64,000 bases of DNA from Octopus sinensis (taxonomy: Eukaryota), in assembly GCF_006345805.1 (NCBI RefSeq), contig NC_043005.1:6510001-6574000 (forward strand), read 5' to 3'. Under the pieces are notes generated by a model. It did no database searches, was not told where the DNA came from, and saw nothing but the letters and a program-made list of their open reading frames with translations. Every line of letters starts with the position of its first letter. The first letter of the stretch is position 1. This document shows positions 15,871 through 59,817 of this stretch, piece by piece. A program made the position numbers and the translations under genes.

Positions 15871-15942
15871 AGAGTTGTTAAACTGGAAAGATTTCGGAAG
15901 GTTCCAGCGTCGATATTCGTTATATCATTTTCGTACAACATC
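15871..15942 (-). CDS. LRR exon 18 (T class): [23 protein letters not shown]
   Basis: cttatgtttcag / 72 nt / gtaagt. Last exon before the gap. Confidence 0.9.
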
Positions 15943-17428
15943 CTGAAACATAAGATTGAGTTAAGAATATTTATTGAACAAATTTGTGTCTAAAGAATTG
16001 GATGATGCAAGAGATGAAATGTAGATTACTATAAAGATGAACTTGATGATGATGTTGTAGATATCGTTGGGTTGGATGAGGGCAGTGATGAGTTTGATGA
16101 TGTGGAAGTGGAGAAGAAATTATTGTGGGAGTGTTGATGATGATGATATGATGCTGATCTTATCAATTTTGATCATCGTGAAAAAGATGAGGATTTGTAG
16201 TTTTGTTGTGATGATGAATATGGTATTGATGATGATGTTGACATTTAAAGGGGTTCCCAAAAAACCTACACTAATTATAGGAGTCGAACCATTCGACTAT
16301 CATAAAACACCGAGATTTACGTTTAACATTTCTCTCCCGTTGTAGCTACTAACATGGCCATATTAAGAGTAGGAAGTTTAAATTTTAGAGGCCTAGGATT
16401 GCCCTTGAAGCAGGGGTGTCTGCTCAACGACCTCGGCCCTTTAGAATTAGACAGAATTGCTCTCAGTGAGACCAGATTATTCATCATGTAAGAACTTGCC
16501 CCAAAACTCGACGACAATCAGATCTTTTCGTTTGTTACTTGACCGGGAATGGGAGGTGGGTTGATTGTTCAAGCAGCACATTTTCTGTACTTGTATACAT
16601 ATATTTATGTATACACCTGTCGATTGTTGCTGGTGTGTGCAAAATCATCGAGCATGAATGGTAATCAGCGTTGATCGAGGAGTAAACATAAGAAATAATA
16701 TAGAAAAGAATATACAGGCACAAATCGATACACTCGTGTACATTCACTCACCCTGAATGACACAGAGTCGCGTATGCACATACATACACAAAATCATATG
16801 CATTATAAGAAACTCAAACATAAACATAAACACTGATAGTCACACACACACTTACACTTGCACACACATACATTCACACAGATACATGCACACGCACTCA
16901 CATGTACACACACACCTTCCGAGATATTCACAAATAATAAATGTTCCTTTGGAAATCGACTGAGTGTATATAGTGCGTTAAGGAGAGTGAGAGAAAAATG
17001 AAAGCATGGAAAGACATTGAATGTTTAGAATTATATTGTCAATAAAAGAGAATCAAGAAACTAATTAAACTTACAGAGTCTTTAAACTGGGAAGATTTTG
17101 AAAAGATCCAACTTCAAGTTCAGTGATGTCATTATTAAACAACTCTCTGTAACAAAAAAAAATGAGCCGTAAAAACGTGTATACAGGTCCGAATGAAATG
17201 TTAAATTTATTGCCTAAATATTGAGGAACGTGACGCTGATGATGATGGTGTAATGATGATGGTGATGATGAAGAGGATAATGATGATGAAGGTGATGATG
17301 ATGATTTTCATGATGCTGATGATGATGACGATGATGATGATAATGATGATAATGATGATGATGATGTTGATGATGATGATGATAATGATGATGATGGTGT
17401 TGATGATGATGATGATGATGATGATGAT

Positions 17429-17493
<65 letters not shown>

Positions 17494-17506
17494 AATGATG
17501 ATGATG

Positions 17507-17561
<55 letters not shown>

Positions 17562-21054: not shown

Positions 21055-22581
21055 CATATGTATTCATATATATATATATATATACACTTACACATATATA
21101 TATATATGATATACATTTTATATATACAGAAATAGAATGAAAGAGGGCGAGAAACGAATAAAGTAGAAAGAAAAGAATGACCAGAGGTAAAGAAGGAGGA
21201 AAAGAAGAAGAAGAGGAAGAAGGAGAAAAAGAAGAGAAGAAGAAGAACAAGAACAACAACAACAACAACAACAACAAAAAACAAGAAGAAGAAGAAAAAT
21301 GTGTAGTATGAAGAGCAAGTATTGAAAATGAATGAGTCGACAAAATAAACGAAATACTTTAAGAAGCCGAACTTCAAGAAGCGGGAAGAAAAGAAGCGAA
21401 ACAAGAGTATACATGTCGATAATACTTATATTCACACACACACCCTCGCACGTACACATGTACAGAGACTCACAAACAGTCACACAGTTCTATCAAAAGG
21501 GATTGAGATAAGGACGGGACGCGAAAGAAAATGGGAAGGTTTTAAATATTTAGTAATATTTTGTAAAGGAAATATTATTAACAAGTTTTATGCAACTTAC
21601 ATCACTTCTAAGCTGGTCAGATTAACGAAGGATCCTACTTGAATCTTCTCGATATTATTTTCATCCAAATGTCTGTAACAGAAAATTTTGGAAACGAGAT
21701 TTATTGGAAAATATTACGTCTGAAATGTCTATAAAATAAAATATTAGATGATTCATATTTGTTAGGTAGTATGATTTCTTGTCTGTATTTGTTAGCTTCC
21801 TTAAATACTGAGAACAGTTTATTGTTTTGCTCGTGTTTTGCCGCTATTTGCATCGGTTTTCCTTGCTTCTGAAGTAGATATTTTTGTAGTCCTATGGTGG
21901 TTATTTTATAGTAGTTTTCCAGCTGTATAAGACCTCTACCACCCTCTATACGTTGTATATATAGCCTTTCTCTGTCAGATTTTGGGTGGTGCATCCTAGA
22001 TCCTGTCATTATTTTTCTTGTTTTCCTGTCTATTTTGGTTGATTCATTTAGTGTCCAGTTAAGGATATTGTAGCTGTAACTTATAACTTGGACGGCTAAA
22101 GTGTTAATACCTATTATCTTGATTTTAGCATTGAACTCTGTTTTTAGTATTGATCTAACTCGTCTATAGTATACTTGGTTTATTTTCTCTTTCATTTGTG
22201 TGTGTTGTATCATATCTAGTTCACGGATTCCTAAATATTTGTATGTCTGACTTTAGTCTAATTCTCTTATTTCATTGGTTTTATCTAGCGTGACGTTGCT
22301 ATTCTTAACTAATTTTCCTCTCTTCAGCGTTGCATTGGAGCATTTTTCTAATCCAAATTTCATATCTGCTTCTTTCGTAAATCCATGTACTGTCTATAGT
22401 AGTGTTTCCACCTGTTTGTCATTTATGGCGTATATTTTTAGGTGATCCATTTATAAAATGTGGCTGATTGTTTTGCCGTAATATTTGTATACGCATCCAG
22501 TTCTATTTAGCATGTCAGATAGAGGTGTCAGACCCAAGCAGGAAACGAGAGGAGAGAGCGTGTCTCCCTATCATTATTATA

Positions 22582-22631
<50 letters not shown>

Positions 22632-25600
22632 ATTGTCTTATTTTTTACACGTGCTTTCACATAGAGGGCAGCTCTATGTGCTTTGGGTAAGTGCTCATAG
22701 TTTTACTTCATTGAAGCTGTTCATCTCCCTCAGCTTTTGGTATCCTTATGGCTATCTCTTCAATAGGGGCTATTGTGTCCAGGTTTGGATTGCGCTAGAT
22801 GGTTGTCGTAAAGTTGAGACCTTAGTTTAGTACTGCTTGAGCTTTGAGTTTCACAAACTTCTTAATCTGGCGTGTGTCACCATTTGAAATTCTTTCCTAG
22901 ATATTGTTGGATTGTTTTTCTATCATCATCTCTGGTTATTTTCCTAAATAATAAAGATAACCTCTCTTTGATTTCATTAATTAGTTGAATGGTTTTCCAG
23001 CTGGTAATCGATCCTGTCAGGTGGTATTAGCTTTGAGTCTCTACATCTACACAGGAAAATTTGATGGTCTGAAAGACGAGCCAGTTTTTGATGCAGTTTC
23101 CCTATGTTTCCACTGAAGTCTATTATATCGGCTCCGTACCGATTAGATAATACAGTTCTATATTTAAAAGACGAGGAAATATGTACGTTATTTACATTAT
23201 TTACATTTGACGGATATTTGTTCTCATCTTGTTTTTTGGTAACACAACCTTACGGCTGATATCCCTTCCAGCCTTCATCAAGTGCCTTGGGGAAATTTCC
23301 AACCTGGGTTCTCATTCCTAAGGCCTTTTTCGATTTTTTAATAACATCGAAACATACCTTAGGAACATGGCAAAATTTTCAACACGAATAATGTAATTCG
23401 CAATAATTAATTAGAACGGAGGACCATGAAAGTTAATCAGCGTTGATCGAGAAGTAAACATAAAGAATAATATACAAAATAAATGATAAAGAAATCGAGT
23501 CGTTTACTCGAGTATGTTCATTCATAACGAACGTCACAGACTGACACATGCGTAATAAAGCACAAAATTATATGCATTAATTATCTGAAACTCATATCAT
23601 AGACACTGATATTCACACAATCGCACACACCCTCACACACACGCAGACACACAGCCACACACACATCTTCTCAGACATTCACAAAGAATCAATGTTCCTG
23701 TGGAAATTGACTGAGTGTATATAGTGCGTTAAGAAGAGTGAGAGAAGAAAGCATAGAAAGACATTAGATGTTTAGAATCATATTGTCAATAAAAGAGAGT
23801 AAAAAAATAATGCAACTTACAGAAACTCTAAACTGGGAAGATCTAGAAAAGATCCAACTTGAAATTCCTTGATATCATTTTTACGTAACATTCTGTAACA
23901 AAAATATACAATGCCTATATAATGCCTAAAAATTTAGGAAAGCTAAGCTGATGATGACGGGGTAGATGACAATGACGATGATGATGATGATGTTACAAAG
24001 TGCCCTTCAAAAGGAAAAGATCCCAAAGTGGATTTTTCGCCAGACTTGACAGCAAAGAAAAACACATTCGCTGTCTGCGCACGATTAGTCTCGGGAAGTT
24101 TGTGAGGAGCCCATTGAGGCAATTTGCTGATTTTCCGCTGGCACTCGGTTATCGATGAATGGTTGAATGAACAAATGTAAGATTATCTGGGAGTTCCTCA
24201 ACAGATACGATGGAATTTTGTTCTACCAGTTTTGCAGAACATTCTCGTCGATCTCTGAAGATCTTCCATGACGAGGCTAGTCCTACAGGCTGTAGTCTCA
24301 GATACGGAATTGCAGTGAAATGCAAACAAAAGATGCGAAGGAGGAAGAGGAGGAGAAGAGAAACAATGAGGAGAAGAATAAATATAAAAAGGGAAATTAA
24401 AAAAAGGGAAATAAAAAAGGGAATACAAAAGAAAGGAAAATGAGATACAATTACAAGCTGCAGAAAATAGATGTAGAGAAATATGTTGAAGCGGATGATG
24501 AAGTAGAAGTGGGAGAATAAGAAGGGGTACAAGAAGGAAAAGCAGGAGAAGGGATGGGGAAGAGAAAAAGGAAGAACAAGTAGAAATATAAGAATAAGAT
24601 GGAGAATAAATAGTAGGAGAAGAGGAAGTACTAGAACTACAGGCCAAAAAAAAATAAAGAAGCAGAAAAAGTTGTAGAAGGAGATGAAGGTGACAAACTA
24701 TAAATTGTGTCTATAGAAAGACATTACAGGTTAAGAAAGATATTGTCAAAGAAATACTATAAAAGGAGGTTGATTCAACTTACAGAGTTGTTAAACTGGA
24801 AAGATTTCTGAAGGTTCCTGCTTTGATATTCGTTATATTATTTTGCTGCAATTGCCTGGAACATAACATTGAGTTAAGAATATTTATTGAACAAATTTGT
24901 GTCTAAAGAATTGGATGATGAAAGAGATGAAATGTAGATTACTATAAAGATGAACTTGATGATGATGTTGTAGATATCGTTGGGTGGGATGAGGGCAGTG
25001 ATGAGTTTGATGATGTGGAAGTGGAGAAGAAATTATTGTGGGAGTGTTGATGATGATGATATGATGCTGATCTTATTAATTTCGATATTCGTGAAAAAGA
25101 TGAGGATTTGTAGATTTTGAAGTGATGATGAATATGGTATTGATGATGATTTGGACATTTAAAGGGGTTCCCAAAAAGACCTACAATAATTATAGGAGTC
25201 GAACCATTCGACTATCATAAAACACCGAGATTTACGTTTAACTTTTCTCTCCCGTTGTAGCTACTAACATGGCCATATTAAGATTAGGAAGTTTAAATTT
25301 TAGAGGCCTAGGATGGCCCTTGACACAGGGGTGTCTGCTCAACGACATCGGCCATTTAGAATTAGACAGAATTGCTGTCAGTGAGACCAGATTATTCATC
25401 ATGTAAGAACTTGCCCCAATACTCGACGACAATCAGATCTTTTCGTTTGTTACTTGACCGGGAATGGGAGGTGGGTTGATTGTTCAAGCAGCACATTTTA
25501 TGTACGTGTATACACATATTTATGTATACACGCACCGATTGTTGCTGGGGTGTCCAAAATCATCGAACACCAGATCAGCTAGTCAACAATGTCTCAGAGA

Positions 25601-26059
25601 TACCGACAAGATCTCTGTAATAGGCCAGTGTGGAACTGTACCAGCCCATGCGTTCTTTTAGAAAGTATATTAAAAGGAGTTAAACTGAGAAAATAGGCAG
25701 TAATAGTGTAGCTTATCCAAATTTAAAAACTGTCGCCTACCCAGATCATGAGTTTGCAATATACACGACTGAGTGTATATAATGCGTTAAGGAGAGTGAG
25801 AGGAAAAAGAAAGCATGGAAAGACATTGAATGTTTAGAATTATATTATCAATGAAAGAGAATCAAAAAACTAATTAAACTTACAGAGTCTTCAAACTGGG
25901 AAGATTTTGAAAAGATCCAACTTCTAATTCCTTGATATCATTTTGATACAACTCTCTGTAATAAAAAAGTGAACCGTAAAAAAAGGTACACAGATCCGAA
26001 TGAAATAAAAAATATATTGCCTAAATATTGAGGAAAGGGACGCAGATGATAATGGTGTA

Positions 26060-26114
<55 letters not shown>

Positions 26115-29100
26115 GTCATGATCAGGATGATGAACGTGATGATGATGATGGTGGTGGTGGTATTTACGATAATAATGTTGATGAGGAAATTAATAAGGTA
26201 AGAATGACCATAGATGTTATTAAAATTGCTAGGAAATCGTTAATTGGATATAATAATAAATTTTAGTAACACCTTCAGTAGGTGAAGACGTCCTTTAGTC
26301 TGGTCTGTCGGTGTTTCTATTTTTCCTAACCATTGTCATCAGCGCTTGACATACTTCTGGAGAATTCATTTCACGTCACCAGGAAATATTTGGTCGAAAA
26401 TGGATCTTTCGTCAGACTTGACAGCAAAGAAAAACACATTCGCTGTCTACGCACGAATAGTCTCGGGAAGTTTGTGAGGAGCCCATTGAGGCAATTTGCT
26501 GACTTTTCCGCTAGCACTCGGTTATCGAGATTCTCTGGTAGTTCCTCAACAGATACGTTGGAATTTTGTTCTACCAGTGTTGCATACCATCCTCGTCGAT
26601 CTCTACAGATCTTCCATGATGAGGCTAGTCCTATAGGCTGTTGTCTCAGACACGGAATTGCAGCAAAATGCGGAGGAAAGATACAACGGAGGAAGTGGAG
26701 GTGAAGAGAAACAAGTAGAAGAAGAGAAACAATGAGGAGAAGAATAAATAAAAAGGGAACTAAAAAATAGAAATAAAAGACAGGGGATAAAAAAAGACGG
26801 GAAATTGAGATACAACTACAGGCTGCAAAAAATAGATGTAGAACAATATGTAGGAGAGGATGCTGAAGTAGAAGTGGGAGAATAAGAAGGGGAAGAAGAA
26901 AGAGGAGGAGGAGGGGAGATGGGGAAGAGAAAAGGAAGAACAAGTAGGAACATTGGAATGAGATAGAGAATAAATAGAAGGCAAAGTTGAAATACTAGAA
27001 CTACAGGCCAAAAAAAAGAAGAAGTAGAAACCGTTTAAGAAGGAGATGAAGGTGGCAAACTATAATTTGTGTCTATAGAAAGACATTACAGGTTAAGAAA
27101 GATATTGTTAAAGAAATACTATAAAAGGAGGTTGATTCAACTTACAGAGTTGCTAAACTGGAAAGATTTCTGAAGGTTCCTGCTTTGATATTCGTTATAT
27201 TATTTTGGTACAACGTCCTGAAACATAAGATTGAGTTAAGAATATTTATTGAACAAATTTGTGTCTAAAGAATTGGATGATGAAAGAGATGAAATGTAGA
27301 TTACTATAAAGATGAACTTGATGATGATGTTGTAGATATAGCTGGATGGGATGAGGGCAATGATGAGTTTGATGATGTGGAAGTGGAGAAGAAATTATTG
27401 TGGGAGTGTTGATGATGATGATATGATGTTGATCTTATCAATTTTGATATTCGTGAAAAAGATGAGGATTTGTAGTTTTGTTGTGATGATGAATATGGTA
27501 TTGATGATAATGTTGACATTTAAAGGGATTGCCAAAAAGACCTACACTAATTATAGGGGTCGACCCATTCGACTATCACAAAACACCGAGATTTACGTTT
27601 AACATTTCTCTCCTGTTGTAGCCGCTCTCATTGCCATATTGAGAGTAGGAAGTTTAAATTTTAGAGGCCTAGGATTGCCTTGGAAGCAGGGGTGTCTGCT
27701 CAACGACAACGGCCCTTTAGAATTAGACAGAATTGCTGTCAGTGAGACTTGATTATTCATCATGTGAGAACTTACTCCAATACTCGTCGACAATCAGATC
27801 ATTTCGTTTGTTTCTTGACCCGGAATGGGAGGTGGGTTGATTGTTCAAGCAGCACATTTTATGTACGTGTATACACATATTAATGTATACACCCGACGAT
27901 TGTTGCTGGTGTGTCCAAAATCATCGAGCACCAGTTCAGCTAGTTACCAATCTCTCAGAGATATCGAACAGATTTCTGTAATACGCTAGTGTGGAACTGT
28001 ACCAACCCCTTGTGTTCTTTTAGAAAGTATATTAAAAGGAGTTAAACTGAGAAAATAGGCAGTAATAGTGTAGCTTATCCAAATTTAAAAACTGTCGCCT
28101 ACTCAGATCATGAGTTTGCAATTTGTACGATTGACTTAGATAAGCCCTGTATGTTATGACCCGGATGCTGGAGCTGAACATGTTGATAGCAGCACGTGAA
28201 AAAGTACTTATAGAAGAGTAGAAGGGTGGAGGAGCTTGTCCTGTTGTAAGTCGAGGCGATTTGGTAACCTACGATAATGGCTTTAGAAATGTTTCAATGC
28301 GAAACATGAAGGTTGCATTATCACAGCTAAGTTGCGTGCTATGAGAAACGAGAGAACCTTATATGTTCGATGGGCCCGGGTGATGGAGGCGCAGCGTGGT
28401 AAGAAAATATTAATTGCGTCTTTGACGAACAAAGGCGTACATAAGCTAAGCAATTCCTGGCAGACCTGTGATGCCTTTCACCAGCACTTTCTTCGGTGGT
28501 TCGGTGGGAGTAGCAGGTCAGAGACGTTAGTGGTTTTCAGTCCGTACCTCGAAGGCTTTACTCAACTTTCCACGGCACACGTTGACCGCAGCGAAAGGTA
28601 GAAAACTTCATTCGCAATTAATGACGCTCTTGTCCGCTGCACGAGGCGCAATGGCGCAAATTACCCTGTTTGGACAGTCTGCCCTACTAGCTTTACGTAA
28701 ACATGCTAGGCCTGATCTCCAATCAACTCGAAGTCTTCTGTTGTTACTGAAAACAGAACGGGCGTATTTCCAGTTCTGTGAACCGGAACATAGTGACGCT
28801 GATAGAGAAAACAAGAGGGACACAGTAGATAACTACCAGCCCATAACACTGCGCCAAACTGAATTTAACACTTTGGTCAATGAGTTACGGAACTATGTGA
28901 CACTTCTCGAATATTTGGATGGTGAGGCGCAAACTTGTGCAATCCCGACCCGCTCCATTCACAACTTCCACGTCATTCTATACACTATAGAATGTGTAGA
29001 GTGGAAACTTGGCTTCAAGGGGACCATGGTAAGTTAAGATCATTCGAAAGCATTCGATACAGTCGACCATTGGTACTTGGAGGCAGTCATCAATGGAGTT

Positions 29101-29845
29101 GGCTTCGGCTGCTCTAAAGAATTTAGATCTCTGTAATAATGAACTACATCTGCTCGACAGACAAAAATAATGGTGACATCTATCAGCCGTTTCAGACTTC
29201 CTTGCCGATCCATCGAAGGTGCCCTTTCTCATCGCTTCTATATGCATTGTGTGTCGAGCCTTTAATGGGGAAGTTAGGGTTAGGGTTAGGGGGCATTTTG
29301 TTTGAACGGGGTTCGGAAGTGATGTGTAAATAAATCAAGCCAATACACTCGTGTACATTCACTCACCCTGAATGACACCCTGAGTGGCATGTGCACAATC
29401 ATGCACAAAATCATATGCATTATCAGAAACTCAAACATAAACACAGACACTGATAGTCACACACACACACTCACACATACACACATGCACACACACAATC
29501 ACACACACACCGGCTCAGATATTCACAAAGAATAAATGTTCCTGCGAGAAACGACTGAGTGTATATAATGCGTTAAAGAGAGTGAGTGAAAAAAGAAAGC
29601 ATGTAAAGACATTAGGTGTTTATAATTTTATTGTCAATAAAAGAGAATCAAAAAACTAATTAAACTTACAGAGTCTTCAAACTGGGAAGACTTTGAAAAG
29701 ATCCAACTTCTAATTCCTTGATATCATTTTGATACAACTCTCTGTAATAAAAAAGTGAACCGTAAAAAAAGGTACACAGATCCGAATGAAATAAAAAATA
29801 TATTGCCTAAATATTGAGGAAAGGGACGCAGATGACAATGGTGTA

Positions 29846-29903
<58 letters not shown>

Positions 29904-31246
29904 GTCATGATCAGGATGAGGAAGGTGATGATGATGATGGTGGTGGTGGTGGTATTTACGATAATAATGTTGATGAGGAAATGAATAAGGTAAGAATGAC
30001 CATAGATGTTAGTTAGTTAGTTAGTTAGTTAATTTGGCTCAAAAGCAAATAGCAAGGCCATGTAGGGGGACATGGAGTTAAGTACAGGTTGGTGTTCATG
30101 TAAAGAGTTCAGGCCACTTGAGGTCCAGGGAGGCTTTGAACAAAGCGGTCGTTGGCATCTTCACCATCTCATCTGGCAGCTTGTTCCACGGATCCGCAAC
30201 CCGGACGGAGAAAGCACCTCTACTTCGATTGAGATGAAATCGTCGCAGGTAGAGCTTTTCGGAATGACCCCGCAGCCGACGCTCCGGAGCAGGAGTGAAG
30301 AACAGCTCTTTCGAGAGTTTACACTTCCCGCTTATGATGTTGTGGGCGAGAATGAGATCACCACGGCGGCGGCGTTTTTCAAGAGAATAAGGTCGAGCGT
30401 CCTCAGCCTTCTTCGTAGGACAATTTTTGAGACCATGAACCAGGCGGGTAGCCAGCCTCTGGACTCTTTCGAGGTGCTGTTTGTCTTTGAGGAGATAAGG
30501 AGAAGAGGCTTGAATCCCATACTCCAATATGGGTCTCACCAGCGTGACATAGAGTGGCAGGAATATGGCTGCTGTGAGCACAAGTCGATACACTCGTGTA
30601 CATTCACTCACCCTGAATGACACAGAGTCGCGTATGCACATACATACACAAAATCATATGCATTATAAGAAACTCAAATATAAACATAAACACTGATAGT
30701 CACACACACACTTACACTTGCACACACATATATTCACACAGATACATGCACACGCACTCACATGTACACACACACCTTCCGAGATATTCACAAATAATAA
30801 ATGTTCCTTTGGAAATCGACTGAGTGTATATAGTGCGTTAAGGAGAGTGAGAGAAACCAGAAAGCATGGAAAGACATTGAATGTTTAGAATTATATTGTC
30901 AATAAAAGAGAATCAAGAAACTAATTAAACTTACAGAGTCTTTAAACTGGGAAGATTTTGAAAAGATCCAACTTCAAGTTCAGTGATGTCATTATTAAAC
31001 AACTCTCTGTAACAAAAAGAAAATGAGCCATAAAAACGTGTATACAGGTCCGAATGAAATATTAAATTTATTGCCTAAATATTGAGGAACGTGACGCTGA
31101 TGATGATGGTGTAATGATGATGGTGATGATGAGGAGGATAATGATGATGAAGGTGATGATGATGATTTTCATGATGCTGATGATGATGACGATGATGATG
31201 ATAATGATGATAATGATGATGATGATGGTGTTAATGATGATGGTGT

Positions 31247-31337
<91 letters not shown>

Positions 31338-32035: not shown

Positions 32036-35000
32036 ATATATATATATATAGGTGAGAAAGTTTGTGTGTGAAAGCACGTGGTTGAATATATAGAAAATAT
32101 TAAAAAATGAAAAAACTACAGAAGGCTTGTTTTAAAAGGTTAAAAAATATATATTTGAGTCATTATGTCAGAAGAATGTTATAAATTTTTTTCATACAGT
32201 GACGTAGTTTTTGAAGAAATTACCGGTTTCGTGTTTAACTTTACAAATTCTCAAAACATTGTTATAATTTCGTTCGTTAAGAAGTGTAAAAGAGAGTTCC
32301 AGGTAAGGGGAGGTAATAAGTGATTTCTTCCGGTGTGAGGGAGATTATCGCTTAATATTTCTTGCCTTTATTTTTAATGGGGTGAGTTTCTCTGTATAAG
32401 AATGTTAGAGTGGTTAAGTTTGGGCTTATATTTTTCAATAAAGAATGTTTCCTTGTTTAGTCTAATTTGTATAGGAACACCAACACAAATTAGAAAGAAA
32501 AGAATGACCACAATAGAGAAGAAGAAGAAAAGAAGAAGAAGAAGAAGAAGAAGAAGAAGAACAACAACAACAACAACAACAACAAAAAACAAGAAGAAGA
32601 AGAAAAAGGTGTAGTATGAAGAGCAAGTATTGAAAATGAAAGAGTCGACAAAATAAACGGAATACTTTAAGAAACCGAACATCAAGAAGCGGGAGGAAAA
32701 GAAGCGAAACAAGGGTATACATGTCGATAATACTTATATTCACACACACACCCTCGCACGTACACATGTACAGAGACTCACAAACAGTCACACAGTTCTA
32801 TCAAAAGGGATTGAGATAAGGACGGGACGCGAAAGAAAATGGGAAGGTTTTAAATATTTAGTAATATTTTCTCAATGAAATATTATTAACAAGTTTTATG
32901 TAACTTACATCAATTCTAAGCTGGTCAGATTAACGAAGGATCCTTCTTGAATCTTCTCGATATTATTTTCATCCAAATATCTGTAACAGAAAATTTTGGA
33001 AACGTGATTTATTGGAAAATATTACGTCTGAAATGTCTATAAAATAAAATAGTAGATGATTAAAAAATGTATAGAAGTGTTTTATGATAAAATGTAAAGT
33101 AGCATGGCTAAACAACAACTTGTACTTTTCCCAATTCTCGACGACAATCAGATCTTTGCGTCTGTTACTCGGCCGGGAATGGGAGTTGAGTGCCTGTTAT
33201 GTGCACGAATATTTGGATCCCGAGATAAAATTGTTCTTCCGGGACCCAGATTGTAAGCTGTTGACCCTGGACGTGAGTAATAGCGAATGTAGTGTAATTA
33301 GACTGGGGGTCGTCTTTGTGCAAACCGGAGCCAAACAGCCGGATTTCTTAAGTTTGGAAACCCTTATATATATATATTTATATATATATATTTATATATA
33401 GCTAGCTAGAGCTTTACTGTTTGTGGGAGATTGGAACGACATCTGAGACGCATGTTGTGATTGTGTTGAATACATACATTGGGGAAAATAATTTTAAGAC
33501 CGATGATAAAAGTTCTATTTCTGACAAAATATTTTGTTACTAACACCATACAAATTATGTATATCTTTTACACCTTATAATACAATTCTCATTGGATAAT
33601 TCTTTACAAATGTTAATGGCCGTCAGCATTCGGTTGCATTACGAAAGTTGATTCGGCGGTCCAACTGCGCCTTTTTTTTCTTGGGACGCCAGCCGTTTGC
33701 CGATCTTTATATTGACCAGTCTCCGAGTATATCTTCCAGGCTTGCACGTAAGCCGTTTTACTGCACTTTAGTTGCTTGCTGATGTTCGAAAAGGAAACTT
33801 TCTGCTGGTGGAGTAATACGATCTTTCCTCTCGTAACTGAACTGAGGCTACGTTGTTTACCCATCATTAATCAATTGTATGATAACATTAAATTATAACA
33901 CTTCATAGTGCAGTTAGGCTAGTTATTTGACCACCCATTTTGGTAAAAAAATAAATTGTCTACATATTACATGGTCTTTAACTAATTTTGTCGGTAAATT
34001 TGAAACGTTTATATTAATTAAGCATTAGAATTCTTTAGGTTGTATAAAAATAGTTATTGTCTGTGTCATTCGAAATAGAAATAAATTCTGCATAAGGTGT
34101 AAGAGATAAAAATAATTTGTATGGTGTTAGTAACACCATACAAAACAGAAATTTTATAATCGGTCTTAACTTTATTTTCGCCAGTGTATATATATGCCGG
34201 GCTTGTTCTCCGATAGAACTGGCGTATTCCCAGTTCTATGGACCGGGGCGTAGTGACGATGATAGGGAAAAACGAAAAGAAGAGTGACACATTGGATAAC
34301 CTTAGGCCTATAAGATACTGTTCTATATTTACGAGATGAGGAATAATGAATTTTGGAGTGAATTTTAAGGGCTTATAAATCTAATATTTTTCTAATCTAT
34401 CCATATGCTACTCATATCTGCACTCGGTCTGCTTAGGATGTTGTTGCGTCCTAGCTGCTTCTTTTAGTTTTCGTATATTCCAGTGGTGTTCTATGTCTAT
34501 TATTTTAACTTCATCCTACAGGGAGGCGTGATGGTCTCCATTTTTCCATATATGATCAGCTATACCCGATTTATCAATATCTCCCCGTGTCGCAGCTTTG
34601 CGAAGTTCGTCTACCATTATTTTTATGGGGTGGCATTTTTCTCCTTGTATAACCTACCACAGCTGCATGGGAGGGAGTACATGCTGTCTTTGGTCATATT
34701 CTCTTCTATTGGTGGTTTTAGACTAAGGGGATATTTGCGAAGTGTTGTATTACTCTTGAATACTGCCCTGATATGATATCAGCCGCATATCTTTTCTATC
34801 TTTTAGGAGAGGCCTTTCAAATAGGGTAGACAGACTGTGCTTGGATTCATTGGGGGTTATCCTTGATCATTTCTGAGAAGTGAAAGGAATTCTTCACGCA
34901 CGATGTTGACTTTCCTGCTAATGGACTGATTATAAGGGAGCGGTTCAGTGGATGACATGCTGAACCTGTAGGGAGAATGTGCATGTGTGTTAGTTTACTG

Positions 35001-42448: not shown

Positions 42449-42481
<33 letters not shown>

Positions 42482-46365: not shown

Positions 46366-49300
46366 CACACACATATGTATTCATATATATACACTTGCAT
46401 ATATATATTATAAATAGAAAGAAAGAGGGCGAGAAACGCATAAAGTAGAAAGTGAAGAATGACCACAGTAGAGAAGAAGAAGAAGAAGAAGAAGAAGAAG
46501 AAGAAGAAGAAGAAGAAGAAGAAGAAGAAGAAGAAGAAGAAGAAGAAGAAGAAGAAGAAGAAGAAGAAGAAGAAGAAGAAGAAGAAGAAGAAGAAGAAGA
46601 AGAAGAAGAAGAAGAAGAAGAAGAAGAAGAAGAAGAAGAAGAAGAAGAAGAAGAAGAGGAAAGTGGAGGGGGAGAAAAAGAAAAATGTGTAGTATGAAGA
46701 GCAAGTATTGAAAATGAACGAGTCGACAAAAGAGACAAAATACCTTAAGAAGCCGAACATCAAGAAGCGGGAAGAAAAGAAGCCGAACAAGGGTAGACAT
46801 GTCGATAATACTTACAGTTGCAGGCCAAAATGTTCTGAACGGCATTTTTTTCGTCAGAAAAGTAGGTATACGTTTTTATCAAAGTTGTTTTGTATTCTAT
46901 AATTTTCACAGACAATAAATACGATATTATTTGTTATTGTCTGAGATTTTGGTGTAATTTGAGAGGATAATACAAAAGTTATGAATGATTTAGTGATTTA
47001 CTGCAAAACCCATGGCGGTCAAAATGATCAGAACGGTTGCTTTTACTCCGTGTTTTAGTATATATAACCGTCGATCTCTAATGTTTTGAATTTGTTTACG
47101 TGATGGTTCGTTTACTAAACATTAGTAAGAATATTTGCAGTGTACTTTGTTAATATAATGCCACTTACTCCGTTACCAATTCGTCAGCAGATTATTAAGC
47201 TTCGAAGGAAGGATAATTTAAGTATTGGATCTATTGCAAAGATTGTTAACAAGTCAAAAAGTGTTGTTCACGGTATTCTTAAGGTCTAGAATGATTGTGG
47301 TTCGTGTAAAGCAAGAAAGTCTACAGGTAGACCAAGAAAAACGACCAAGAGAGAAGATCGTGCTATGGTAAAGTTGGTTAAAAATGACAGATTTAAAACT
47401 GCTGCTGCTGTGTTTCAGGAAATGAGCATTGTACTGAAGAAAACTTTATCTCGAAAAACTGTGTCTCGACCTTTAGTTGAACATGACCTACAAGCAAGAG
47501 CACCTGCAGTGAAGCCACTGATCAGCTCCAAGAATAAAAAGTGTCGTCTTACCTTTGCAACCGAACATGTGTTGTGGTCCCAAGGAAAATGGTAAACGGT
47601 GCATTTCAGGGATGAATCTAAGTTTATATTATTAGGCTCAGATGGGAAAAGGTACATTCGTCGAAAAGTAGGTGAAAAATTGTCGCCTAAATGCCTTAAG
47701 ACTAGCGTTAAATTCGGTGGAGGAAGTGTCATGGTTTGGTGGATGATGTCTGGAGATGGTGTGGGCCCTTTGGTGCGATTACATGGAAAGGTAAATGCAG
47801 AAGTTTATAAACAACTTGTAAAAGATCATGTCTTGACTGTGCTGAGAAATTCAACTAAGCGACCATCCATATTCATGCAGGAAAATGCCCCATGTCACAT
47901 GGCTAAGGTGATCATGAACTTCCTCAAGGCCGAAAAGGTTATTGTTATGGATTGGCCTGCTCAAAGCCCAGATCTCAATCCTATTGAAAATGTGTAGAAT
48001 ATTCTAGGAGAACGTTCGAAAGCCAGAAATCCTAAAACAACGGAACAATTATGGAATGCTCTTCAGGAAGAATGGAATAAGATCACCCAGCAAGAAATTG
48101 AAAATTTAATTTCCTCATGCAGTCGAAGATGTCAAAGTGTGATTGAAGCTAAAGGGCTTCACACTAAATATTAAATAATTCCAGTATTCTGTCGTTTTTG
48201 ATTATTTTGTTATTTTTTCAACCGTTCTGATCATTTTGACCGCCATGGGTTTTGCAATAAATCACTAAATCATCCATAACTTTTGTATTATCCTCTCAAA
48301 TTACACCAAAATCTCAGACAATTACAATAACAACTCATATCGTATTTATTGTCTGTGAAAATTATAGAATATAAAACAGCTTTGATAAAAATTTATACCT
48401 ACGTATGTGACAAAAACAATGCCGTTCTGAAAATTTTGGCCGCAACTGTATATTCACACACACACTTGCACGTATACATCTACAGAGAATCACAAACAGT
48501 TCTATCAGAAGGGATTGAGATAAGGATGGGACGCGAAAGAAAATGTGAAGGTTTTAAATATTTAGTAATATTTTGTCAATGAAATATTATCAACACGATT
48601 TATGCAACTTACATCAATTCTAAGCTGGTCAGATTAACGAAGGATCCTTCTTGAATCTTCTCGATATTATTTTCAAGCAAATTTCTGTAACAGAAAATTT
48701 TGGAAACGAGATTTATTGTAAAATATTATGACTGAAATGTCTTTAAAATGAAATATTAGATGATTAGAAAATGTATAGAAGTGTTTTATGATAAAATGTA
48801 AAATAGCATGGCTAAACAATAACTTGTACTTTTCCCAATTCTCGACGACAATCAGATCTTTGCGTCTGTTACTCGGCCGGGAATGGGAGGTGAGTGGCAG
48901 TTATATACAGGAATGACCAGGATCCCGAGGTAAAATTAATCTTGCGGGACCCAGATTGTGAGCCTTTGACCCTGGACGTGAGTAATAGCGAAGGTAGTGT
49001 AAAGAGACTGGTGGTCGTCGTTGCGCATACCGGAGCAAAACAGCCGGATTTCTTGAGTTTCGAAGCCTTTATATCACGTGATCAGGTGACCGACCAGACC
49101 ATCAGATGTTGTTACACATCGCTGGTCACAATGTGTTCGCATTGTTTTAGCCTTCGAATGACGCCAGCCCGCTGGCTAAGCGAGCAGGCCAACAGAAGAA
49201 AGAATGGGAGAAAGAGTACAGCAGGGATCATCACCCCTTGCCGGAGCATCGTGGAGCTTTTAGGTGTTTTCGCTCAATAAACACTCACAACGCCCGGCCT

Positions 49301-52300
49301 GGTACTCGAAACCAAGATCCTACGACCGCGAGTCCGCTACACTAGCCACTGGGCCATTGCGCCTCCTCGTGATCACATGATATATCATGTGTGACCCTTC
49401 TGCCCGGCACTACTCGCCATAATCGATCGTTAGCCACTACACATATTCTTTTCTCTCCTTGTTTCTCGCCTTGTTTTTTCTGTGCTCCTTTCTGTAGAAG
49501 AGCGTAGGCTCGAAACGTAAAAGACCTTTGCTATTCCTGAGAGTTATACTAATACATCTGTTTGTTTTGTACACCACCTGTCTTCGTCTTTTATTTTTCG
49601 TAAACTCTCCCTATATATTTATATTTAGGTAGGGCTTTACTGTTTGTGGGGGGATTGGAACGTCATCTGAGACGTTGGTTGCGATTGTGCTGAATACATA
49701 CACTGGCGAAAATAAATTTAAGACCGATGATAAAAGTTCTATTTCTTTCAAAATATTTTGTTACTAACACCATACAAATTATTTTTATCTTTTACACTTT
49801 ATGCAGAATTTATTTCTCTTTCGAATGATACAAACATTAACTAAGGTATTTTTTGATGTTATAATAACATCGAAAAATACCTTAGGAATGTAGCAAAATT
49901 TCAACATGAATAATGTAATTCACAATATGTAATTAGAACGGAGAGACATGAAAGTTAATCAGCGTTGATCGAGAAGTAAGCATAAAAAACAATATACAAA
50001 TCAAATCGTTTACTCGAGTATGTTCATTCATAACGAAAGTAACAAACTGACACATGCGCAATAATGCACAAAATTATGTGCATCAGAAACTCATACATAA
50101 ACAGAGACGCAGATATTCACACACTCACGCACACACACACATACCTCAGATTTTCACAAAGAATTGTATATTTCTGTTGAAAGCGACTGAGTGTATATAG
50201 TGCATATATGGAAAGAAATTAAATGCTTAGAATTATAATGTCAATAAATGACATGTTACTTACAGATTCTCTAAACTGGGAAGATTCTGAAACGATCCCG
50301 CTTCTAATTCCTTGATATCATTTTTATGCAACTCTCTGTAACAAAAAAAAATACATAAAGCCTAAAAATTAAGGAAAGCGAAGCTGATGATGACGGGGTA
50401 GATGACAATGATGATGATGATGATGATGTCGAATGAGCAATTGATGAGTATCATGATGATATTGATGATGATGGTAGTGGTATTGATGGTGTTTATCTTA
50501 GTTATGTTGATGAGGAAAGCCATGGCAATGATAACGTTGATGATCGTGATGGTGAAGAATTTACGTAGCTGGAAATATTTTCAGAGAAATAAAGAAAGTA
50601 AATGGCTAAGAGTTTAAAGGTTGTAGATATTTGCATATGATTAAATTTGCTTTAAGAATACGATTAGAAGATCGATATGTGGCATTCATCGTTGATCCAG
50701 AGCTAAACGCAGTAAGAGTTATACAGACATGAATACACTAGTATTGGACCAGCCATACACAAAACATAAACATATGTATATACATACATAAAATGTGCTG
50801 CTTGAACTGTCACACGGTCCTATGTACTTACACACACACGTAAGGACTCACAAACACACACTGACAGCCATTCAAATACAATCATATACACGCTCTGTTG
50901 AGAGAGTGCGAATGCAGAGAGGGGAAAGAGCGCCATTTAATTGGATGGCAATTAAATATTATAAATATGACTCTAATGAAATACTATGACGAATTATCTG
51001 AATTAGAACAAAGTAAAACCAGAAAATTTCTGGACAATTCCAGCTTCAATTTTCTTGATAGTATCGCTATACAAAGTCCCGAAAAACAAAAATTTAGGTT
51101 GAACAGTATATGTATCGTGTCACCCCATACAAAATGCATTTTTATACTTCTTTTATTTTCATAATTAAGATAAATAAATTTATTTTTTAATCTAAAAATA
51201 TACTCTCCGTCATTTTCTACAATGCATTTACCTCTTGCAGAACATCCTCATCGATCTCTACAGATCTTCCATGACAAGGCTAGTCCTCTAGGCTGTAGTC
51301 TCAGACACGGTATTGCAGTGAAATGCAGAGGAAGGATGCAACGAAAGAAGAGGAGGAGAAGAGAAACAAGTATAAGAAGAAAAACAATGAGGAGAAGAAT
51401 AAATAAAAAGGTCCCTCTTCCAAACTTCACTTGTCCGTACAGAAAAATACTCCTCACTACTATTCTGAAATCGCCTACAAAATACTTATTTTTTTCCAGA
51501 TGTGAAAATGTCCGGCAAATATGGAGTGTGGGGCATTGTCTCCCGTCCAGACTGGTCACGCGTTTGGAATGTCATCCTCTCGTATGTTGCCGAGCGTTAT
51601 CCTGATCGAAGGACAACATTCGTCTTGATAAGAAAAATGGTCGTTTTTCGTTCACAGCTGACTGACGGCGTTCAAGCGGCTGGCAGTAGATATCCTTTGT
51701 TATCTTTTGTTCAAAGTGGACCAGACAATTCATATACCACCAAACAAATAGTAACACCTTTTATGGGGGAAGACTTCCTTTAGTCTGGTCTGTCGGTGTT
51801 TCTACTTTTCTTGACTATTGTTTTCTGCACTAGACATACTTCTAGAGAATCCATTTCTCGTCAGCAGTAATTATTTGGTCCAAATTAGCGTTAGGGTTGC
51901 CAGTATATATTTGGTCGAAAATGGATCTTTCGTCAGACTTGACAGCAAAGAAGAACGATTAGTCTCGGGAAGTTTGTGAGGAGCCCATTGAGGCAATTTG
52001 CTGACATTTCCGCTGGCACTCAGATGTCGATGAATGGTTGAATGAATAAATGCAAGATTATCTGGGAGTTCCTCAACAGATACGATGGAATTTTGTTCTA
52101 CAAGTTTTGCAGAACATCCTCGTCGGTGTCTACAGATCTTCCATGATGAGGCTAGTCCTCTAGGATGTAATCTCAAACTACATATTGCAGTGAAATGCAG
52201 ACAAAAATACGAAGGAGGAAGAGGAGGAGAAGAGAAACAAGTACAAGAAGAAAAACAATGAGGAGAAGAATAAATATAAAAAGGGAATTTAAAAAAGGGG

Positions 52301-53131
52301 AAATAAAAAAGGGAATACAAAAGAAAGGAAAATGAGATACAACTACAAGCTGCAGAAAATAGATGTAGAGAAATATGTAGGAGAGGATGCTGAAGTAGAA
52401 GTGGGAGAATAAGAAGGGGAAGAAGAAGGGGAGGAGGAGAAGAGATGGGGAAGAGAAAAAGGAAGACCAAGTATGAAAATAAGAATAAGATGGAGAATAA
52501 ATAGCAGGAGAAGAGGAAGTACTAGAACTGCAGGCCAAAAAAAAATAAAGAAGCAGAAAAAGTTGTAGAAGGAGATGAAGGTGACAAACTATAAATTGTG
52601 TCTATAGAAAGACATTACAGATTTAGAAAGATATTGGGAAAGAAATACTATAAAAGGAGGTTGATTCAACTTACAGAGTTGCTAAACTGGAAAGATTTCG
52701 GAAGGTTCCTGCTTTGATATTCGTTATATTATTTTGGTACAACTTCCTGAAACATAAGATTGAGTTAAGAATATTTATTGAACAAATTTGTGTCTAAAGA
52801 ATTGGATGATGAAAGAGATGAAATGTAGATTACTATAAAGATGAACTTGATGATGATGTTGTAGATATCGTTGGGTTGGATGAGGGCAGTGATGAGTTTG
52901 ATGATGTGGAAGTGGAGAAGAAATTATTGTGGGAGTGTTGATGATGATGATATGATGCTGATCTTATCAATTTTGATCTTCGTGAAAAAGATGAGGATTT
53001 GTAGTTTTTGTTCTGACGATGAATATGGTATTGATGATAATGTTGGTGTTGGTGTTTTCTGCTGGTGACGAAGTTTTTGGTGTTGATGATGGTTGTCATG
53101 TTCCCTTTTGTCCCATCCATCCCCCAAAAGC

Positions 53132-53959: not shown

Positions 53960-54769
53960 CAGTCGAAGTCGCTATTGTTGTGGTAGAAGAAGGAGGAGGA
54001 TGTGGTGGTGGATGAGGAGGGGGAGAATGAGAAGTAAAAAGAAATTTTCGATATAAAAGAAGAAATTTAGGCAGATGCATGTTTCGTGTTTAGGAGTAAA
54101 TGATAAAGAAATAGAAAAGTTGAAATAAAATTACGCTGAATGGAAATAATTAGAACGGAGAGCCATGAATAGTAATCAGCGTTGATCGAGAAATAAATAT
54201 AATAAATAATATACAAAAAGATATAAAAGTCAAGTCGCTCACTCGTGTACTTTCACTCATACAGACAGACACATACACATAGACACACATGTACAAAGAT
54301 CCTATACATTCATTATCAGAGACTCATACATAAATAGTGTATATAGTGTATATAGTGTATATAGTGCGTTAGGAAGAGTGAGAGAAAAAAGAAAGCATTG
54401 AGAGACATTAAATGATTAGAATTATATTGTCAATAAAAGAGAATCGAAAAACTAATGCAACTTACAGAGTCTCTAAATTGGGAAGATCTTGAAAAGATCC
54501 AGCTTCTAATTCAGTGATTTGATTTTCATACAAATTTCTGTAACACAAAAAGTGAGACGTGAAAAAATGTACACAGGTCCGAATGAAATATAAAATATAT
54601 TGCCTAAAAATTTAGGAAAATAGATGATGATGATGATGATGATGATGACGACGATGATGATGATGATGATGATGACGACGATGATGATGATGATGATGAT
54701 GATGACGATGATGGTGTAGATGATGATGATAATGATGATGCCGGTGGTGGTCGTATCGATGATGGTGAA

Positions 54770-54800
<31 letters not shown>

Positions 54801-59817: not shown

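What the first reader, a model, noticed from the sequence alone, without database searches (positions are those of the whole stretch)
15871..59817. Paralogous exons differ mainly at concave-face (ligand-contact) LRR positions, mostly non-synonymously
Seen: the three C-class exons differ at only 5 nucleotide sites, none synonymous (codon 1 H/Y/N, codon 3 D/D/L, codon 12 V/E/E, codon 23 V/L/L). T-class exons start E-L-H-N, K-L-Y-Q, Q-L-Q-Q, T-L-Y-Q, Q-L-Q-Q and M-L-Y-E, while GTF.NLSSL is essentially invariant. S-class exons vary E/N/M-L-F/Y/H/R-N/Q/K/E and end KT/EN/ET/EF. Established: the x positions of LxxLxLxxN form the concave beta-sheet binding surface, and this is where VLRs and plant LRR receptors diversify. 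Inference: diversifying selection on a binding surface.
Basis: partly seen in the sequence, partly recalled or inferred. Interest (0 to 1): 0.8.

Follow-up and report, generated by a model that had tools for sequence, protein, structure and literature searches.

The report
Duplicated LRR exons diverging on binding face
This is the middle of a large, probably cephalopod, gene in which 18 separate 72-base exons each encode one turn of a leucine-rich-repeat receptor domain; the recently duplicated exons have changed mostly at residues lining the predicted binding face, a pattern already known from other repeat receptors.

Summary
Observation confirmed. On the minus strand lie 18 intact LRR exons. 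Each is exactly 72 nt, bounded by phase-2 introns, with an AG acceptor after a pyrimidine-rich tract and a GTAAGT donor. They fall into classes T (6), S (9) and C (3) exactly as described, and the C-class detail (5 variable sites, none synonymous) is correct.

- Four dead "A-class" relic exons.
- The introns were duplicated along with the exons, at 82-96% identity.
- A T-(A)-S-C-S unit of 11-14 kb is repeated three times.

My own codon-partition likelihood model, applied within classes, gave these omega values:
- Concave codons: about 2.8-3.0.
- Other exposed positions: about 0.8.
- Core positions: about 0.14.

Omega = 1 at the concave codons is rejected (p about 0.002; 0 of 200 parametric bootstraps; p = 0.007 with a double-hit term).

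Three things weaken this:
- Against intron divergence in recent duplicates, the excess is 1.56-fold (p = 0.08). It is strong in T and C but absent in S.
- Four-gamete failures inside the exon show gene conversion or recurrent mutation.
- No orthologues were found.

The closest relatives are Octopus LRR proteins, including one LRR adhesion GPCR. The closest analogue is the brown-algal ROCO genes, which also have 72-bp LRR exons.

The parts
59746..59817 (-). E1, T-class LRR exon ([23 protein letters not shown]), the most diverged T copy
57989..58059 (-). Relic A-class LRR exon. It is 71 nt long (a 1-nt deletion) and has TGA at the Leu-1 codon in the LRR frame. The AG and GT splice sites are still present.
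56088..56159 (-). Relic A-class LRR exon ([23 protein letters not shown]). The frame is open, but the donor GT has changed to GG and the conserved Gly and Leu are lost.
54466..54537 (-). E2, S-class LRR exon (diverged)
52675..52746 (-). E3, T-class exon, first exon of repeat unit 1
51007..51078 (-). Relic A-class exon of unit 1. The acceptor CAG has become CGG and the conserved Asn is lost. Coordinates are approximate, taken from the alignment.
50264..50335 (-). E4, S-class exon (unit 1)
48613..48684 (-). E5, C-class exon (unit 1)
41737..41808 (-). E6, S-class exon (unit 1)
38818..38889 (-). E7, T-class exon, first exon of unit 2
37342..37407 (-). Relic A-class exon of unit 2. The acceptor CAG has become CTG and there is a 6-nt deletion. 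Coordinates are approximate.
36603..36674 (-). E8, S-class exon (unit 2). It differs from E4 by 1 synonymous nucleotide.
32909..32980 (-). E9, C-class exon (unit 2)
30935..31006 (-). E10, S-class exon (unit 2). It is identical to E17, although their flanking introns are about 4% diverged.
29670..29741 (-). E11, S-class exon, part of a small S-T tandem duplication
27146..27217 (-). E12, T-class exon
25884..25955 (-). E13, S-class exon. It differs from E11 by 1 nucleotide.
24784..24855 (-). E14, T-class exon, first exon of unit 3
23821..23892 (-). E15, S-class exon (diverged; unit 3)
21601..21672 (-). E16, C-class exon (unit 3)
17075..17146 (-). E17, S-class exon (unit 3)
15871..15942 (-). E18, T-class exon, the last LRR exon in the window. 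An assembly gap (N run 15319-15418) lies just downstream.

Best explanation
The window holds the internal part of one large gene on the minus strand, most likely from a cephalopod.

Architecture:
- Each 24-residue extracellular-type leucine-rich repeat is encoded by its own 72-nt exon bounded by phase-2 introns.
- Spliced in series, the 18 exons give at least 432 residues of uninterrupted LRR solenoid.
- The N-cap, the C-cap and whatever follows lie outside the window. In the nearest relatives the LRR array is followed by a Cys-rich region, and in one of them (P0122) also by GPS and a family-2 7TM domain.

How the array grew (shown):
- A five-exon unit, T-A-S-C-S, of about 11-14 kb was duplicated in tandem, giving three copies.
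- A smaller S-T unit was also duplicated.
- Introns were copied with the exons.
- The A-type exons then died through splice-site loss, a frameshift or a stop codon.

How the copies diverged:
- The surviving copies are kept intact at core positions (shown).
- They have diverged disproportionately, and almost only by amino-acid changes, at LRR positions 2, 3, 5, 7 and 8 (shown).
- Those positions line the concave beta-sheet (inferred from a model of a relative and from established LRR structure).

The most likely reading (inferred) is episodic positive selection after exon duplication. This would make successive turns of a lengthening solenoid chemically different and so remodel a ligand-binding surface. 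Short-tract gene conversion between paralogous exons probably moved some of the variant patches around.
For: Exon anatomy and splice sites:
- 18 exons of exactly 72 nt with conserved acceptors and GTAAGT donors.
- The spliced product matches Pfam LRR_8 with E = 1e-158 in 14 stretches.

Duplication:
- Intron-inclusive segmental duplications at 82-96% identity.

Exon death:
- Four relic exons with different lesions.

Purifying selection on the fold:
- Core omega is 0.09-0.14.
- Core change is 0.23 times the intron rate, p = 8e-4.

Concave acceleration:
- Omega is 2.1-3.0, and omega = 1 is rejected at p = 0.011 and 0.002.
- Parametric bootstrap: 0 of 200 replicates reach the observed statistic.
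- The result is robust to a double-hit parameter, p = 0.007.
- Per-class estimates are 2.6 (T), 2.9 (S) and unbounded (C).
- Event counts are 25 amino-acid-changing to 0 synonymous at concave codons, against 18:8 and 3:5 elsewhere.
- T and C copies exceed the intron rate 3.1-fold and 2.6-fold.
- E12 and E14 differ at 5 of the first 13 nt but at 0 of the next 51 nt.

Register and surface:
- In an AlphaFold2 model of the Octopus relative P0001 (pLDDT above 95 over the LRRs), the beta-strands fall on LRR positions 3-5 with a 24-residue period.
- The best fold matches are LRRTM2, FLRT2, LGR4/5 and the Nogo receptor.
- All 14 N-glycosylation sequons sit at positions 10 and 21, and none is on the concave positions.

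Relatives:
- Octopus sinensis LRR proteins at 48-53% identity, including one LRR-GPS-7tm_2 protein.
Against: - There is no transcript evidence, so exon inclusion and expression are inferred from intact frames and splice sites only.
- The gene's ends are not in the window.
- No orthologue or close homologue was found in three protein searches. Every rate estimate therefore comes from 18 paralogous 72-nt exons.
- The pooled excess over the intron rate is modest (1.56-fold, p = 0.08), and recent S-class duplicates show zero concave change where 3.9 changes are expected.
- Among the recent duplicates alone, the concave versus convex contrast is not significant (p = 0.06-0.11).
- Four-gamete violations mean the trees used are not strictly valid, and old variation may have been shuffled in by conversion.
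- My filtering of intron alignments may under-estimate the neutral rate.
Confidence: 0.6

Rival explanations
1. There is no positive selection. Exposed concave residues are simply unconstrained, and short-tract gene conversion between old, diverged paralogous exons, some possibly outside the window, has pasted pre-existing variant patches such as QLQQ versus KLYQ into otherwise young copies. This would make exon divergence look larger than flank divergence and push dN/dS above 1.
For: - Three mutually incompatible site patterns lie within 72 nt of the T exons.
- Exon and flank relationships disagree. E3's exon is closest to E12, yet its downstream flank is closest to E14 and its upstream flank to E18. 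E7 and E14 share an identical first 13 nt although their flanks are about 10% diverged.
- The variation is clustered in a 13-nt block at the 5' end of the exon.
- The pooled intron-referenced excess is only 1.56-fold, p = 0.08.
Against: - Conversion from a diverged donor should bring linked synonymous and convex differences along. Instead, concave codons show 25 amino-acid-changing events and 0 purely synonymous ones, and the adjacent 51 nt can be identical.
- Mere relaxation gives omega near 1, not 2-3. The equally exposed convex x positions sit at 0.6-0.8 and at 0.9 times the intron rate.
- C-class copies have three different residues at codon 1 and no candidate donor in the window.
Confidence: 0.25
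2. The exons are not all constitutive. Every exon is 72 nt and bounded by introns of the same phase, so any subset can be spliced in frame. The array could therefore be a store of cassette exons whose variable inclusion yields many receptor isoforms with different concave surfaces.
For: - All exons are symmetrical and in the same phase.
- Alternative splicing of 72-bp LRR exons is reported for brown-algal ROCO genes (PMC11378527).
- The array contains near-identical exons (E10 = E17; E4 and E8 nearly so) whose joint inclusion adds length but no new surface.
Against: - There are no transcript data.
- The exon classes are interleaved (T-S-C-S) rather than being a run of alternatives for one position.
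- Introns are 1-7 kb and all donors are strong GTAAGT sites, as expected for constitutive exons.
- The annotated Octopus relative P0122 carries a comparable 4-LRR super-repeat, about four and a half times over, in one predicted protein.
Confidence: 0.1
3. The array is a decaying pseudogene fragment or an assembly artefact (uncollapsed haplotypes), and the pattern has no functional meaning.
For: - Four dead exons lie in the array.
- There is an assembly gap at 15319-15418.
- No gene ends are present in the window.
- No identical annotated protein was found.
Against: - All 18 exons keep an open frame, exact length and both splice sites. The relic exons show what decay looks like here.
- Core codons evolve at 0.23 times the intron rate and at omega 0.09-0.14.
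- Copies differ by 2-12% in their introns and lie in a consistent tandem order. By my own general knowledge that is far above heterozygosity, so they are real paralogues.
Confidence: 0.05

Closest known systems
Octopus LRR ectodomain proteins: O. sinensis LOC115224769 (P0122; LRR + GPS + 7tm_2 adhesion GPCR), 'LRRC15-like' P0001, and O. bimaculoides 'TLR5' P0224. P0122 may belong to the octopus-specific adhesion-GPCR expansion of Ritschard et al. 2019 (PMC6408891, group 3), but I did not check that.
   Same: - They use the same 24-residue repeat type, with near-identical stretches such as [17 protein letters not shown].
- They are 48-53% identical over the array.
- The genes are very large with long introns (P0001 spans 229 kb).
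- P0122 also has a multi-LRR super-repeat.
- The paper reports positive-selection signatures in that co-localised expansion, and LRRs in 5 of 22 members.
   Different: - No LRRNT, LRRCT, GPS or 7TM is present in this window, so membership cannot be shown.
- No orthologue above 53% identity exists in the searched collections.
- In P0122 the paralogous repeats do not vary preferentially at concave positions, and positions 5 and 7 are nearly invariant.
Brown-algal ROCO (LRR-ROC-COR) genes with shuffled 72-bp LRR exons (Zambounis et al. 2012, as cited in Teng et al. 2024, PMC11378527)
   Same: - One LRR per 72-bp exon, with all introns in the same phase.
- Exon duplication and shuffling within genes.
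- PAML site models place the positively selected sites on the concave face.
   Different: - A different kingdom and a different protein: a cytoplasmic ROCO GTPase with a 23-residue-coded motif, against an extracellular-type, N-glycosylated 24-residue LRR here.
- Alternative splicing is documented there and untested here.
- Here the duplication unit is a defined five-exon block rather than free shuffling.
Glycoprotein-hormone receptor and LGR4-6 genes, and Slit genes (one LRR per roughly 72-bp exon)
   Same: - Exon-per-repeat organisation with in-phase (phase-2) introns. This rests on my own knowledge and on Koo et al. 1991 as quoted in PMC11378527.
- LGR4/5 ectodomains are among the best sequence and fold matches, and R-spondin binds their concave face (established knowledge).
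   Different: - Those arrays are ancient and conserved, and their repeats are not recent paralogues with 82-96% identical introns.
- No class-A 7TM exon is seen here.
Lamprey/hagfish variable lymphocyte receptors and plant LRR resistance proteins
   Same: Hypervariability is concentrated on the x residues of LxxLxLxxN on the concave sheet (established knowledge).
   Different: - VLR diversity is somatic: LRR cassettes lacking splice sites are copied into an incomplete germline gene. Here the exons are ordinary, in one orientation, each with its own splice sites.
- Plant R-gene evidence comes from alleles and paralogous genes, not from repeats within one gene.

Membership tests
Extracellular 'typical' LRR proteins (Pfam LRR_8 / 24-residue LxxLxLxxNxLxxLxxxxFxxLxx) | Tandem 24-residue repeats with the LxxLxLxxN core and the F at position 19 | tested here: met
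   LRR_8 E = 1e-158 in 14 stretches. L6, N9, G17, F19, L22 and L1 are invariant in all 18 exons.
Extracellular 'typical' LRR proteins (Pfam LRR_8 / 24-residue LxxLxLxxNxLxxLxxxxFxxLxx) | Cysteine-rich N- and C-terminal caps (LRRNT/LRRCT) and a signal peptide | tested here: inconclusive
   tblastn with the cap regions of P0001, P0122, P0224 and P0213 finds nothing in the window. The gene evidently continues beyond both ends of the window.
Octopus LRR adhesion GPCRs (LRR + GAIN/GPS + 7tm_2) | GPS motif and family-2 7TM domain downstream of the LRRs | tested here: inconclusive
   These domains are present in the relative P0122 but absent from the 15.9 kb downstream in this window. The truncated relatives P0001 and P0224 lack them too.
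Octopus LRR adhesion GPCRs (LRR + GAIN/GPS + 7tm_2) | LRR array specifically similar to the octopus proteins | tested here: met
   48-53% identity to O. sinensis P0122 and P0001, against about 30% to all other LRR proteins.
Exon-per-repeat LRR arrays under concave-face positive selection (brown-algal ROCO type) | Each LRR on its own 72-nt exon, with all introns in one phase | tested here: met
   18 of 18 exons are 72 nt with phase-2 introns.
Exon-per-repeat LRR arrays under concave-face positive selection (brown-algal ROCO type) | dN/dS above 1 at concave positions of paralogous exons | tested here: met
   Omega is 2.1-3.0, p = 0.002-0.011, bootstrap 0 of 200. Caveats: the intron-referenced test gives p = 0.08, and recombination signals are present.
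Exon-per-repeat LRR arrays under concave-face positive selection (brown-algal ROCO type) | Alternative splicing of LRR exons | not testable with these tools
   No transcript data for this locus are available.
VLR-type somatically assembled LRR receptors | Germline LRR cassettes without splice signals flanking an incomplete gene, copied in by gene conversion | tested here: not met
   Every cassette here is a canonical exon with an AG acceptor and a GTAAGT donor, in one orientation and in phase.
Dscam-type mutually exclusive exon clusters | A run of alternative exons that all replace the same protein segment, with docking and selector intron pairing | not tested
   The exon classes are interleaved (T-S-C-S) and each adds a solenoid turn. 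Intron RNA pairing was not examined.

The most novel reading that the evidence does not exclude
The 18 symmetrical, same-phase LRR exons form a combinatorial cassette store. Variable exon inclusion, together with germline patch conversion between exons, would give one cephalopod gene many receptor isoforms whose concave surfaces differ. This would be a Dscam-like or ROCO-like route to recognition diversity, built on LRRs, in an animal lineage already known for expanded protocadherins and adhesion GPCRs.
Probability: 0.1. Interest if true: 0.75.

Novelty: new member of a known kind. Interest (0 to 1): 0.4.

Why it matters
Cephalopods expanded several cell-surface recognition families, including protocadherins and adhesion GPCRs, and how those receptors gain new specificities is an open question. 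This locus shows one concrete route.

- An LRR ectodomain is lengthened by copying multi-exon blocks.
- Some copies are pruned by exon death.
- The binding-face residues of the surviving copies are then changed while the fold-determining residues are held fixed.

The architecture (72-nt in-phase LRR exons with fast-evolving concave residues) is also described in brown algae. That makes it a useful case of convergent gene architecture for evolvable receptors. It does not overturn anything known about LRR evolution.

Tried and rejected
- A first LRR regex on translated frames missed the exons because they are split at position 4. A splice-aware scan solved this.
- A global MAFFT alignment of 400-nt flanks gave inflated divergences because of microsatellites and indels. 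It was replaced by local pairwise alignments and filtered alignments.
I did not try to get round this. For structure prediction I used the Octopus relative P0001 instead.
- DNA of the O. sinensis relative's locus could not be fetched because the gene spans 229 kb, so no orthologous codon alignment was possible.
- Three protein searches found no close orthologue or transcript fragment: the normal query, a length-padded query to reach long proteins, and an 8-exon query to reach fragments.
- I tried to identify the source species from the LINE ORF. The best representatives are unnamed ENA/Logan contigs at 51% identity or less.
- No tRNA-like element was detected.
- One likelihood run timed out and one failed on a missing interpreter. 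Both were rerun successfully.
- Pseudogene and assembly-artefact readings were considered and rejected; see the rival explanations.

Full report
**What is in the window**

The DNA is eukaryotic, about 37% G+C and crowded with microsatellites. It also contains non-LTR retrotransposon fragments.

A splice-aware scan and a profile HMM search of all six frames agree on the exon set. There are exactly 18 intact leucine-rich-repeat exons, all on the minus strand, running from 59746-59817 down to 15871-15942.

Each exon has the same structure:
- It is exactly 72 nt.
- It follows a pyrimidine-rich tract ending in AG (ttaCAG, tttCAG, ttcCAG or ttgCAG).
- It is followed by GTAAGT.
- Its first base completes a split Leu/Ile codon and its last two bases start the next, so all introns are phase 2 and every exon is symmetrical.

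Joined in order, the exons give 431 residues with no stop. This product matches Pfam LRR_8 at E = 1e-158 in 14 stretches.

The register is as follows. Codons 1-20 are LRR positions 5-24. Codons 21-23 are positions 1-3. The split codon is position 4. The 'x' residues of LxxLxLxxN are therefore codons 22, 23, 1, 3 and 4.

**Checking the observation**

The C-class exons differ at five nucleotide sites, all amino-acid changing.

Across all 18 exons, the most variable positions are 5 and 7 (8 and 7 different residues), followed by position 3 (6 different residues).

I made a tree-free count of the minimum number of codon-state changes within classes:

| Codon set | Codons | Amino-acid-changing events | Synonymous events |
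|---|---|---|---|
| Concave | 5 | 25 | 0 |
| Other exposed | 10 | 18 | 8 |
| Core | 8 | 3 | 5 |

The concave enrichment gives binomial p = 7e-4. An exact permutation over all 3003 five-codon subsets of the non-core codons gives p = 0.005.

1. The introns are duplicated along with the exons. Self-alignment finds 0.3-2 kb blocks around homologous exons at 82-96% identity.
2. The exon order shows a higher-order unit repeated three times, each copy about 11-14 kb: E3-E6, E7-E10 and E14-E17. The full order is T, S, T, S, C, S, T, S, C, S, S, T, S, T, S, C, S, T.
3. A small S-T duplication (E11-E12 and E13-E14) is inserted between units 2 and 3.
4. There are four additional dead 'A-class' LRR exons (NAIKKIE type):
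   - about 57989-58059: 71 nt, and in the LRR frame a TGA.
   - 56088-56159: donor GT changed to GG.
   - about 51007-51078: acceptor CAG changed to CGG.
   - about 37342-37407: acceptor CAG changed to CTG, plus a 6-nt deletion.

The ancestral unit was therefore T-A-S-C-S, and the array has both gained and lost exons.

No LRRNT, LRRCT or other domain of the relatives is present in the window. The gene extends beyond both ends.

**Identity of the gene**

The best protein matches are Octopus sinensis LRR proteins at 48-53% identity, against about 30% for every other LRR protein. They share near-identical stretches such as [17 protein letters not shown].

- One relative, P0122 (1566 aa), has a signal peptide, about 20 LRRs, a Cys-rich region, GPS and 7tm_2. 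It is an adhesion GPCR.
- Others (P0001, P0224) are shorter forms.
- P0001's gene spans 229 kb.

Ritschard et al. 2019 describe an octopus-specific, co-localised expansion of adhesion GPCRs. Five of its 22 members carry LRRs, and it shows positive-selection signatures (PMC6408891). I did not check whether P0122 belongs to that group.

No orthologue or transcript fragment of the window's own gene was found. The source species could not be named. A cephalopod is the best guess, not a demonstrated fact.

**Testing the selection claim with codon models**

No PAML or HyPhy was available. I wrote a Goldman-Yang-type codon likelihood model with these features:
- F3x4 codon frequencies.
- A synonymous rate shared across all codons.
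- A separate omega for site classes fixed in advance: concave (codons 1, 3, 4, 22, 23), other exposed, and core.

| Analysis | Concave | Other exposed | Core | Test of concave omega = 1 |
|---|---|---|---|---|
| Whole 18-exon tree | 2.05-2.1 | 0.62 | 0.09 | 2dlnL = 6.4, p = 0.011 |
| Within-class trees only | 2.85-3.0 | 0.78 | 0.14 | 2dlnL = 9.4-10.1, p about 0.002 |
| With a double-nucleotide-change rate | 2.76 | 0.77 | 0.15 | p = 0.007 |

Further results:
- Setting concave omega equal to other-exposed omega is rejected (2dlnL = 19.9, p = 8e-6).
- In a parametric bootstrap under omega = 1, none of 200 replicates reached the observed statistic. The 99th percentile was 4.4 against an observed 8.9.
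- Per-class estimates are 2.6 (T), 2.9 (S) and unbounded (C). Each is only marginal on its own, with p = 0.04-0.06.

**An independent yardstick: the introns**

For groups of recent duplicates I counted minimum changes per site in well-aligned flanking intron and compared them with the exon partitions.

| Partition | Observed / expected | Note |
|---|---|---|
| Core codons | 0.23 | p = 8e-4 |
| Other exposed codons | 0.90 | about neutral |
| Concave codons, pooled | 1.56 (13 vs 8.3) | p = 0.08 |

The pooled concave figure hides heterogeneity:
- T copies: 8 observed vs 2.6 expected.
- C copies: 5 vs 1.9.
- The three young S groups: 0 vs 3.9.

E10 and E17 are identical although their introns are about 4% diverged.

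Within the recent groups alone, the contrast between concave and other exposed codons is a trend only (p = 0.06-0.11).

**Recombination**

In the five young T exons, three site patterns are mutually incompatible under the four-gamete test, all within 72 nt:
- nt 2, 4, 8 and 10, shared by E7 and E14.
- nt 47, shared by E12 and E14.
- nt 65, shared by E14 and E18.

Exon and flank relationships also disagree. E12 and E14 differ at 5 of the first 13 nt but at 0 of the next 51 nt.

Either the same changes arose repeatedly or short conversion tracts moved the 5' 'concave patch' between exons. This violates the single-tree assumption of the models. It also means some variation may be older than the flanks suggest.

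Against a pure conversion artefact, the patches carry almost no linked synonymous or convex differences. The equally exposed convex positions also behave neutrally rather than fast.

**Controls and structural register**

Control: the Octopus relative P0122 has its own 4-LRR super-repeat. Its paralogous repeats show no concave excess (5.2 vs 5.0 residue changes per position). Positions 5 and 7, the most variable here, are nearly invariant there. The pattern in the window is therefore not an automatic property of LRR super-repeats.

Register: an AlphaFold2 model of the relative P0001 has pLDDT above 95 over the LRRs. It places a beta-strand on positions 3-5 of every 24-residue repeat. Its best fold matches are LRRTM2, FLRT2, chondroadherin, LGR4/5 and the Nogo receptor. 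The best sequence matches among solved structures are TLR3, LRRC15, ALS and LGR5.

All 14 N-glycosylation sequons of the spliced product lie at positions 10 and 21, off the concave strand. This fits a glycosylated ectodomain with a free concave face. That this face binds a ligand remains an inference.

**Verdict**

The most likely explanation has three parts:
- An extracellular LRR solenoid was lengthened by tandem duplication of multi-exon blocks.
- Purifying selection acts on the fold.
- Episodic positive selection, probably helped by patch conversion, acts on concave residues of some copies (T, C and the older S lineages). Other copies (the young S duplicates) are frozen.

This is the same kind of thing already described for the 72-bp LRR exons of brown-algal ROCO genes (PMC11378527). 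More loosely it resembles plant R proteins, TLRs and VLRs. It is not VLR-like in mechanism, because these are ordinary spliced exons.

I rate it a new member of a known kind, of moderate interest. The untested possibility that the symmetrical exons are used combinatorially by alternative splicing is the only route to a surprising result.

Noticed in passing
window 57989-58059, 56088-56159, ~51007-51078, ~37342-37407 (minus strand): Four decayed LRR exons of a fourth class (NAIKKIE type), each killed differently: a 1-nt deletion plus TGA, donor GT to GG, acceptor CAG to CGG, and acceptor CAG to CTG plus a 6-nt deletion. They show that the repeat unit was originally five exons (T-A-S-C-S) and that exon death accompanies exon birth.
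   Followed up: yes
window 61185-63986 (+) and 53-652 (+): Non-LTR retrotransposon fragments. One has an RVT_1 reverse-transcriptase ORF followed by a zf-RVT ORF, preceded by a roughly 1 kb (TAA)n tract. A second zf-RVT fragment lies at the start of the window. The closest database proteins are unnamed contigs at 51% identity or less, so they do not identify the species.
   Followed up: partly
window 1477-3125: A 78-nt minisatellite of about 21 copies at 87% match. On the + strand it reads as an open Glu/Lys-rich repeat (NENEEEETEGDGKEEEKADERRSEGV). It has no Pfam match, and whether it is coding is unknown.
   Followed up: partly
window 7127-7613, 12525-12686, 12877-13209, 14244-14432, 14880-15107: A dispersed short repeat, tandem with a 191-nt period at 7127-7613. 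It recurs in both orientations downstream of the LRR array and looks like a SINE-type element. ARAGORN finds no tRNA-like part.
   Followed up: partly
window 17237-17700, 31098-31592, 41899-42768, 26045-26150, 29846-29939, 54623-54822: Long (TGA)n/(GAT)n microsatellites of up to 870 nt sit at the same relative place, in the intron just upstream (5', on the minus strand) of S-class exons. They were copied as part of the duplication unit and now differ greatly in length.
   Followed up: no
window 15319-15418: An assembly gap of 100 N lies 450 nt downstream of the last LRR exon. The next exon of the gene could be hidden here or lie beyond the window.
   Followed up: no
Octopus sinensis locus of P0001 (no DNA held): In O. 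sinensis the 229-kb gene for the LRRC15-like relative overlaps, on the opposite strand, a gene model for a 1088-aa LRR + GPS + 7tm_2 protein. Either LRR genes are nested antisense there, or the gene models are tangled.
   Followed up: no
spliced product of E1-E18: All 14 N-glycosylation sequons fall at LRR positions 10 (NIT) and 21 (NLS/NLT), and none at concave positions. T-class repeats carry one or two each (two in E1, E3, E12 and E14).
   Followed up: yes
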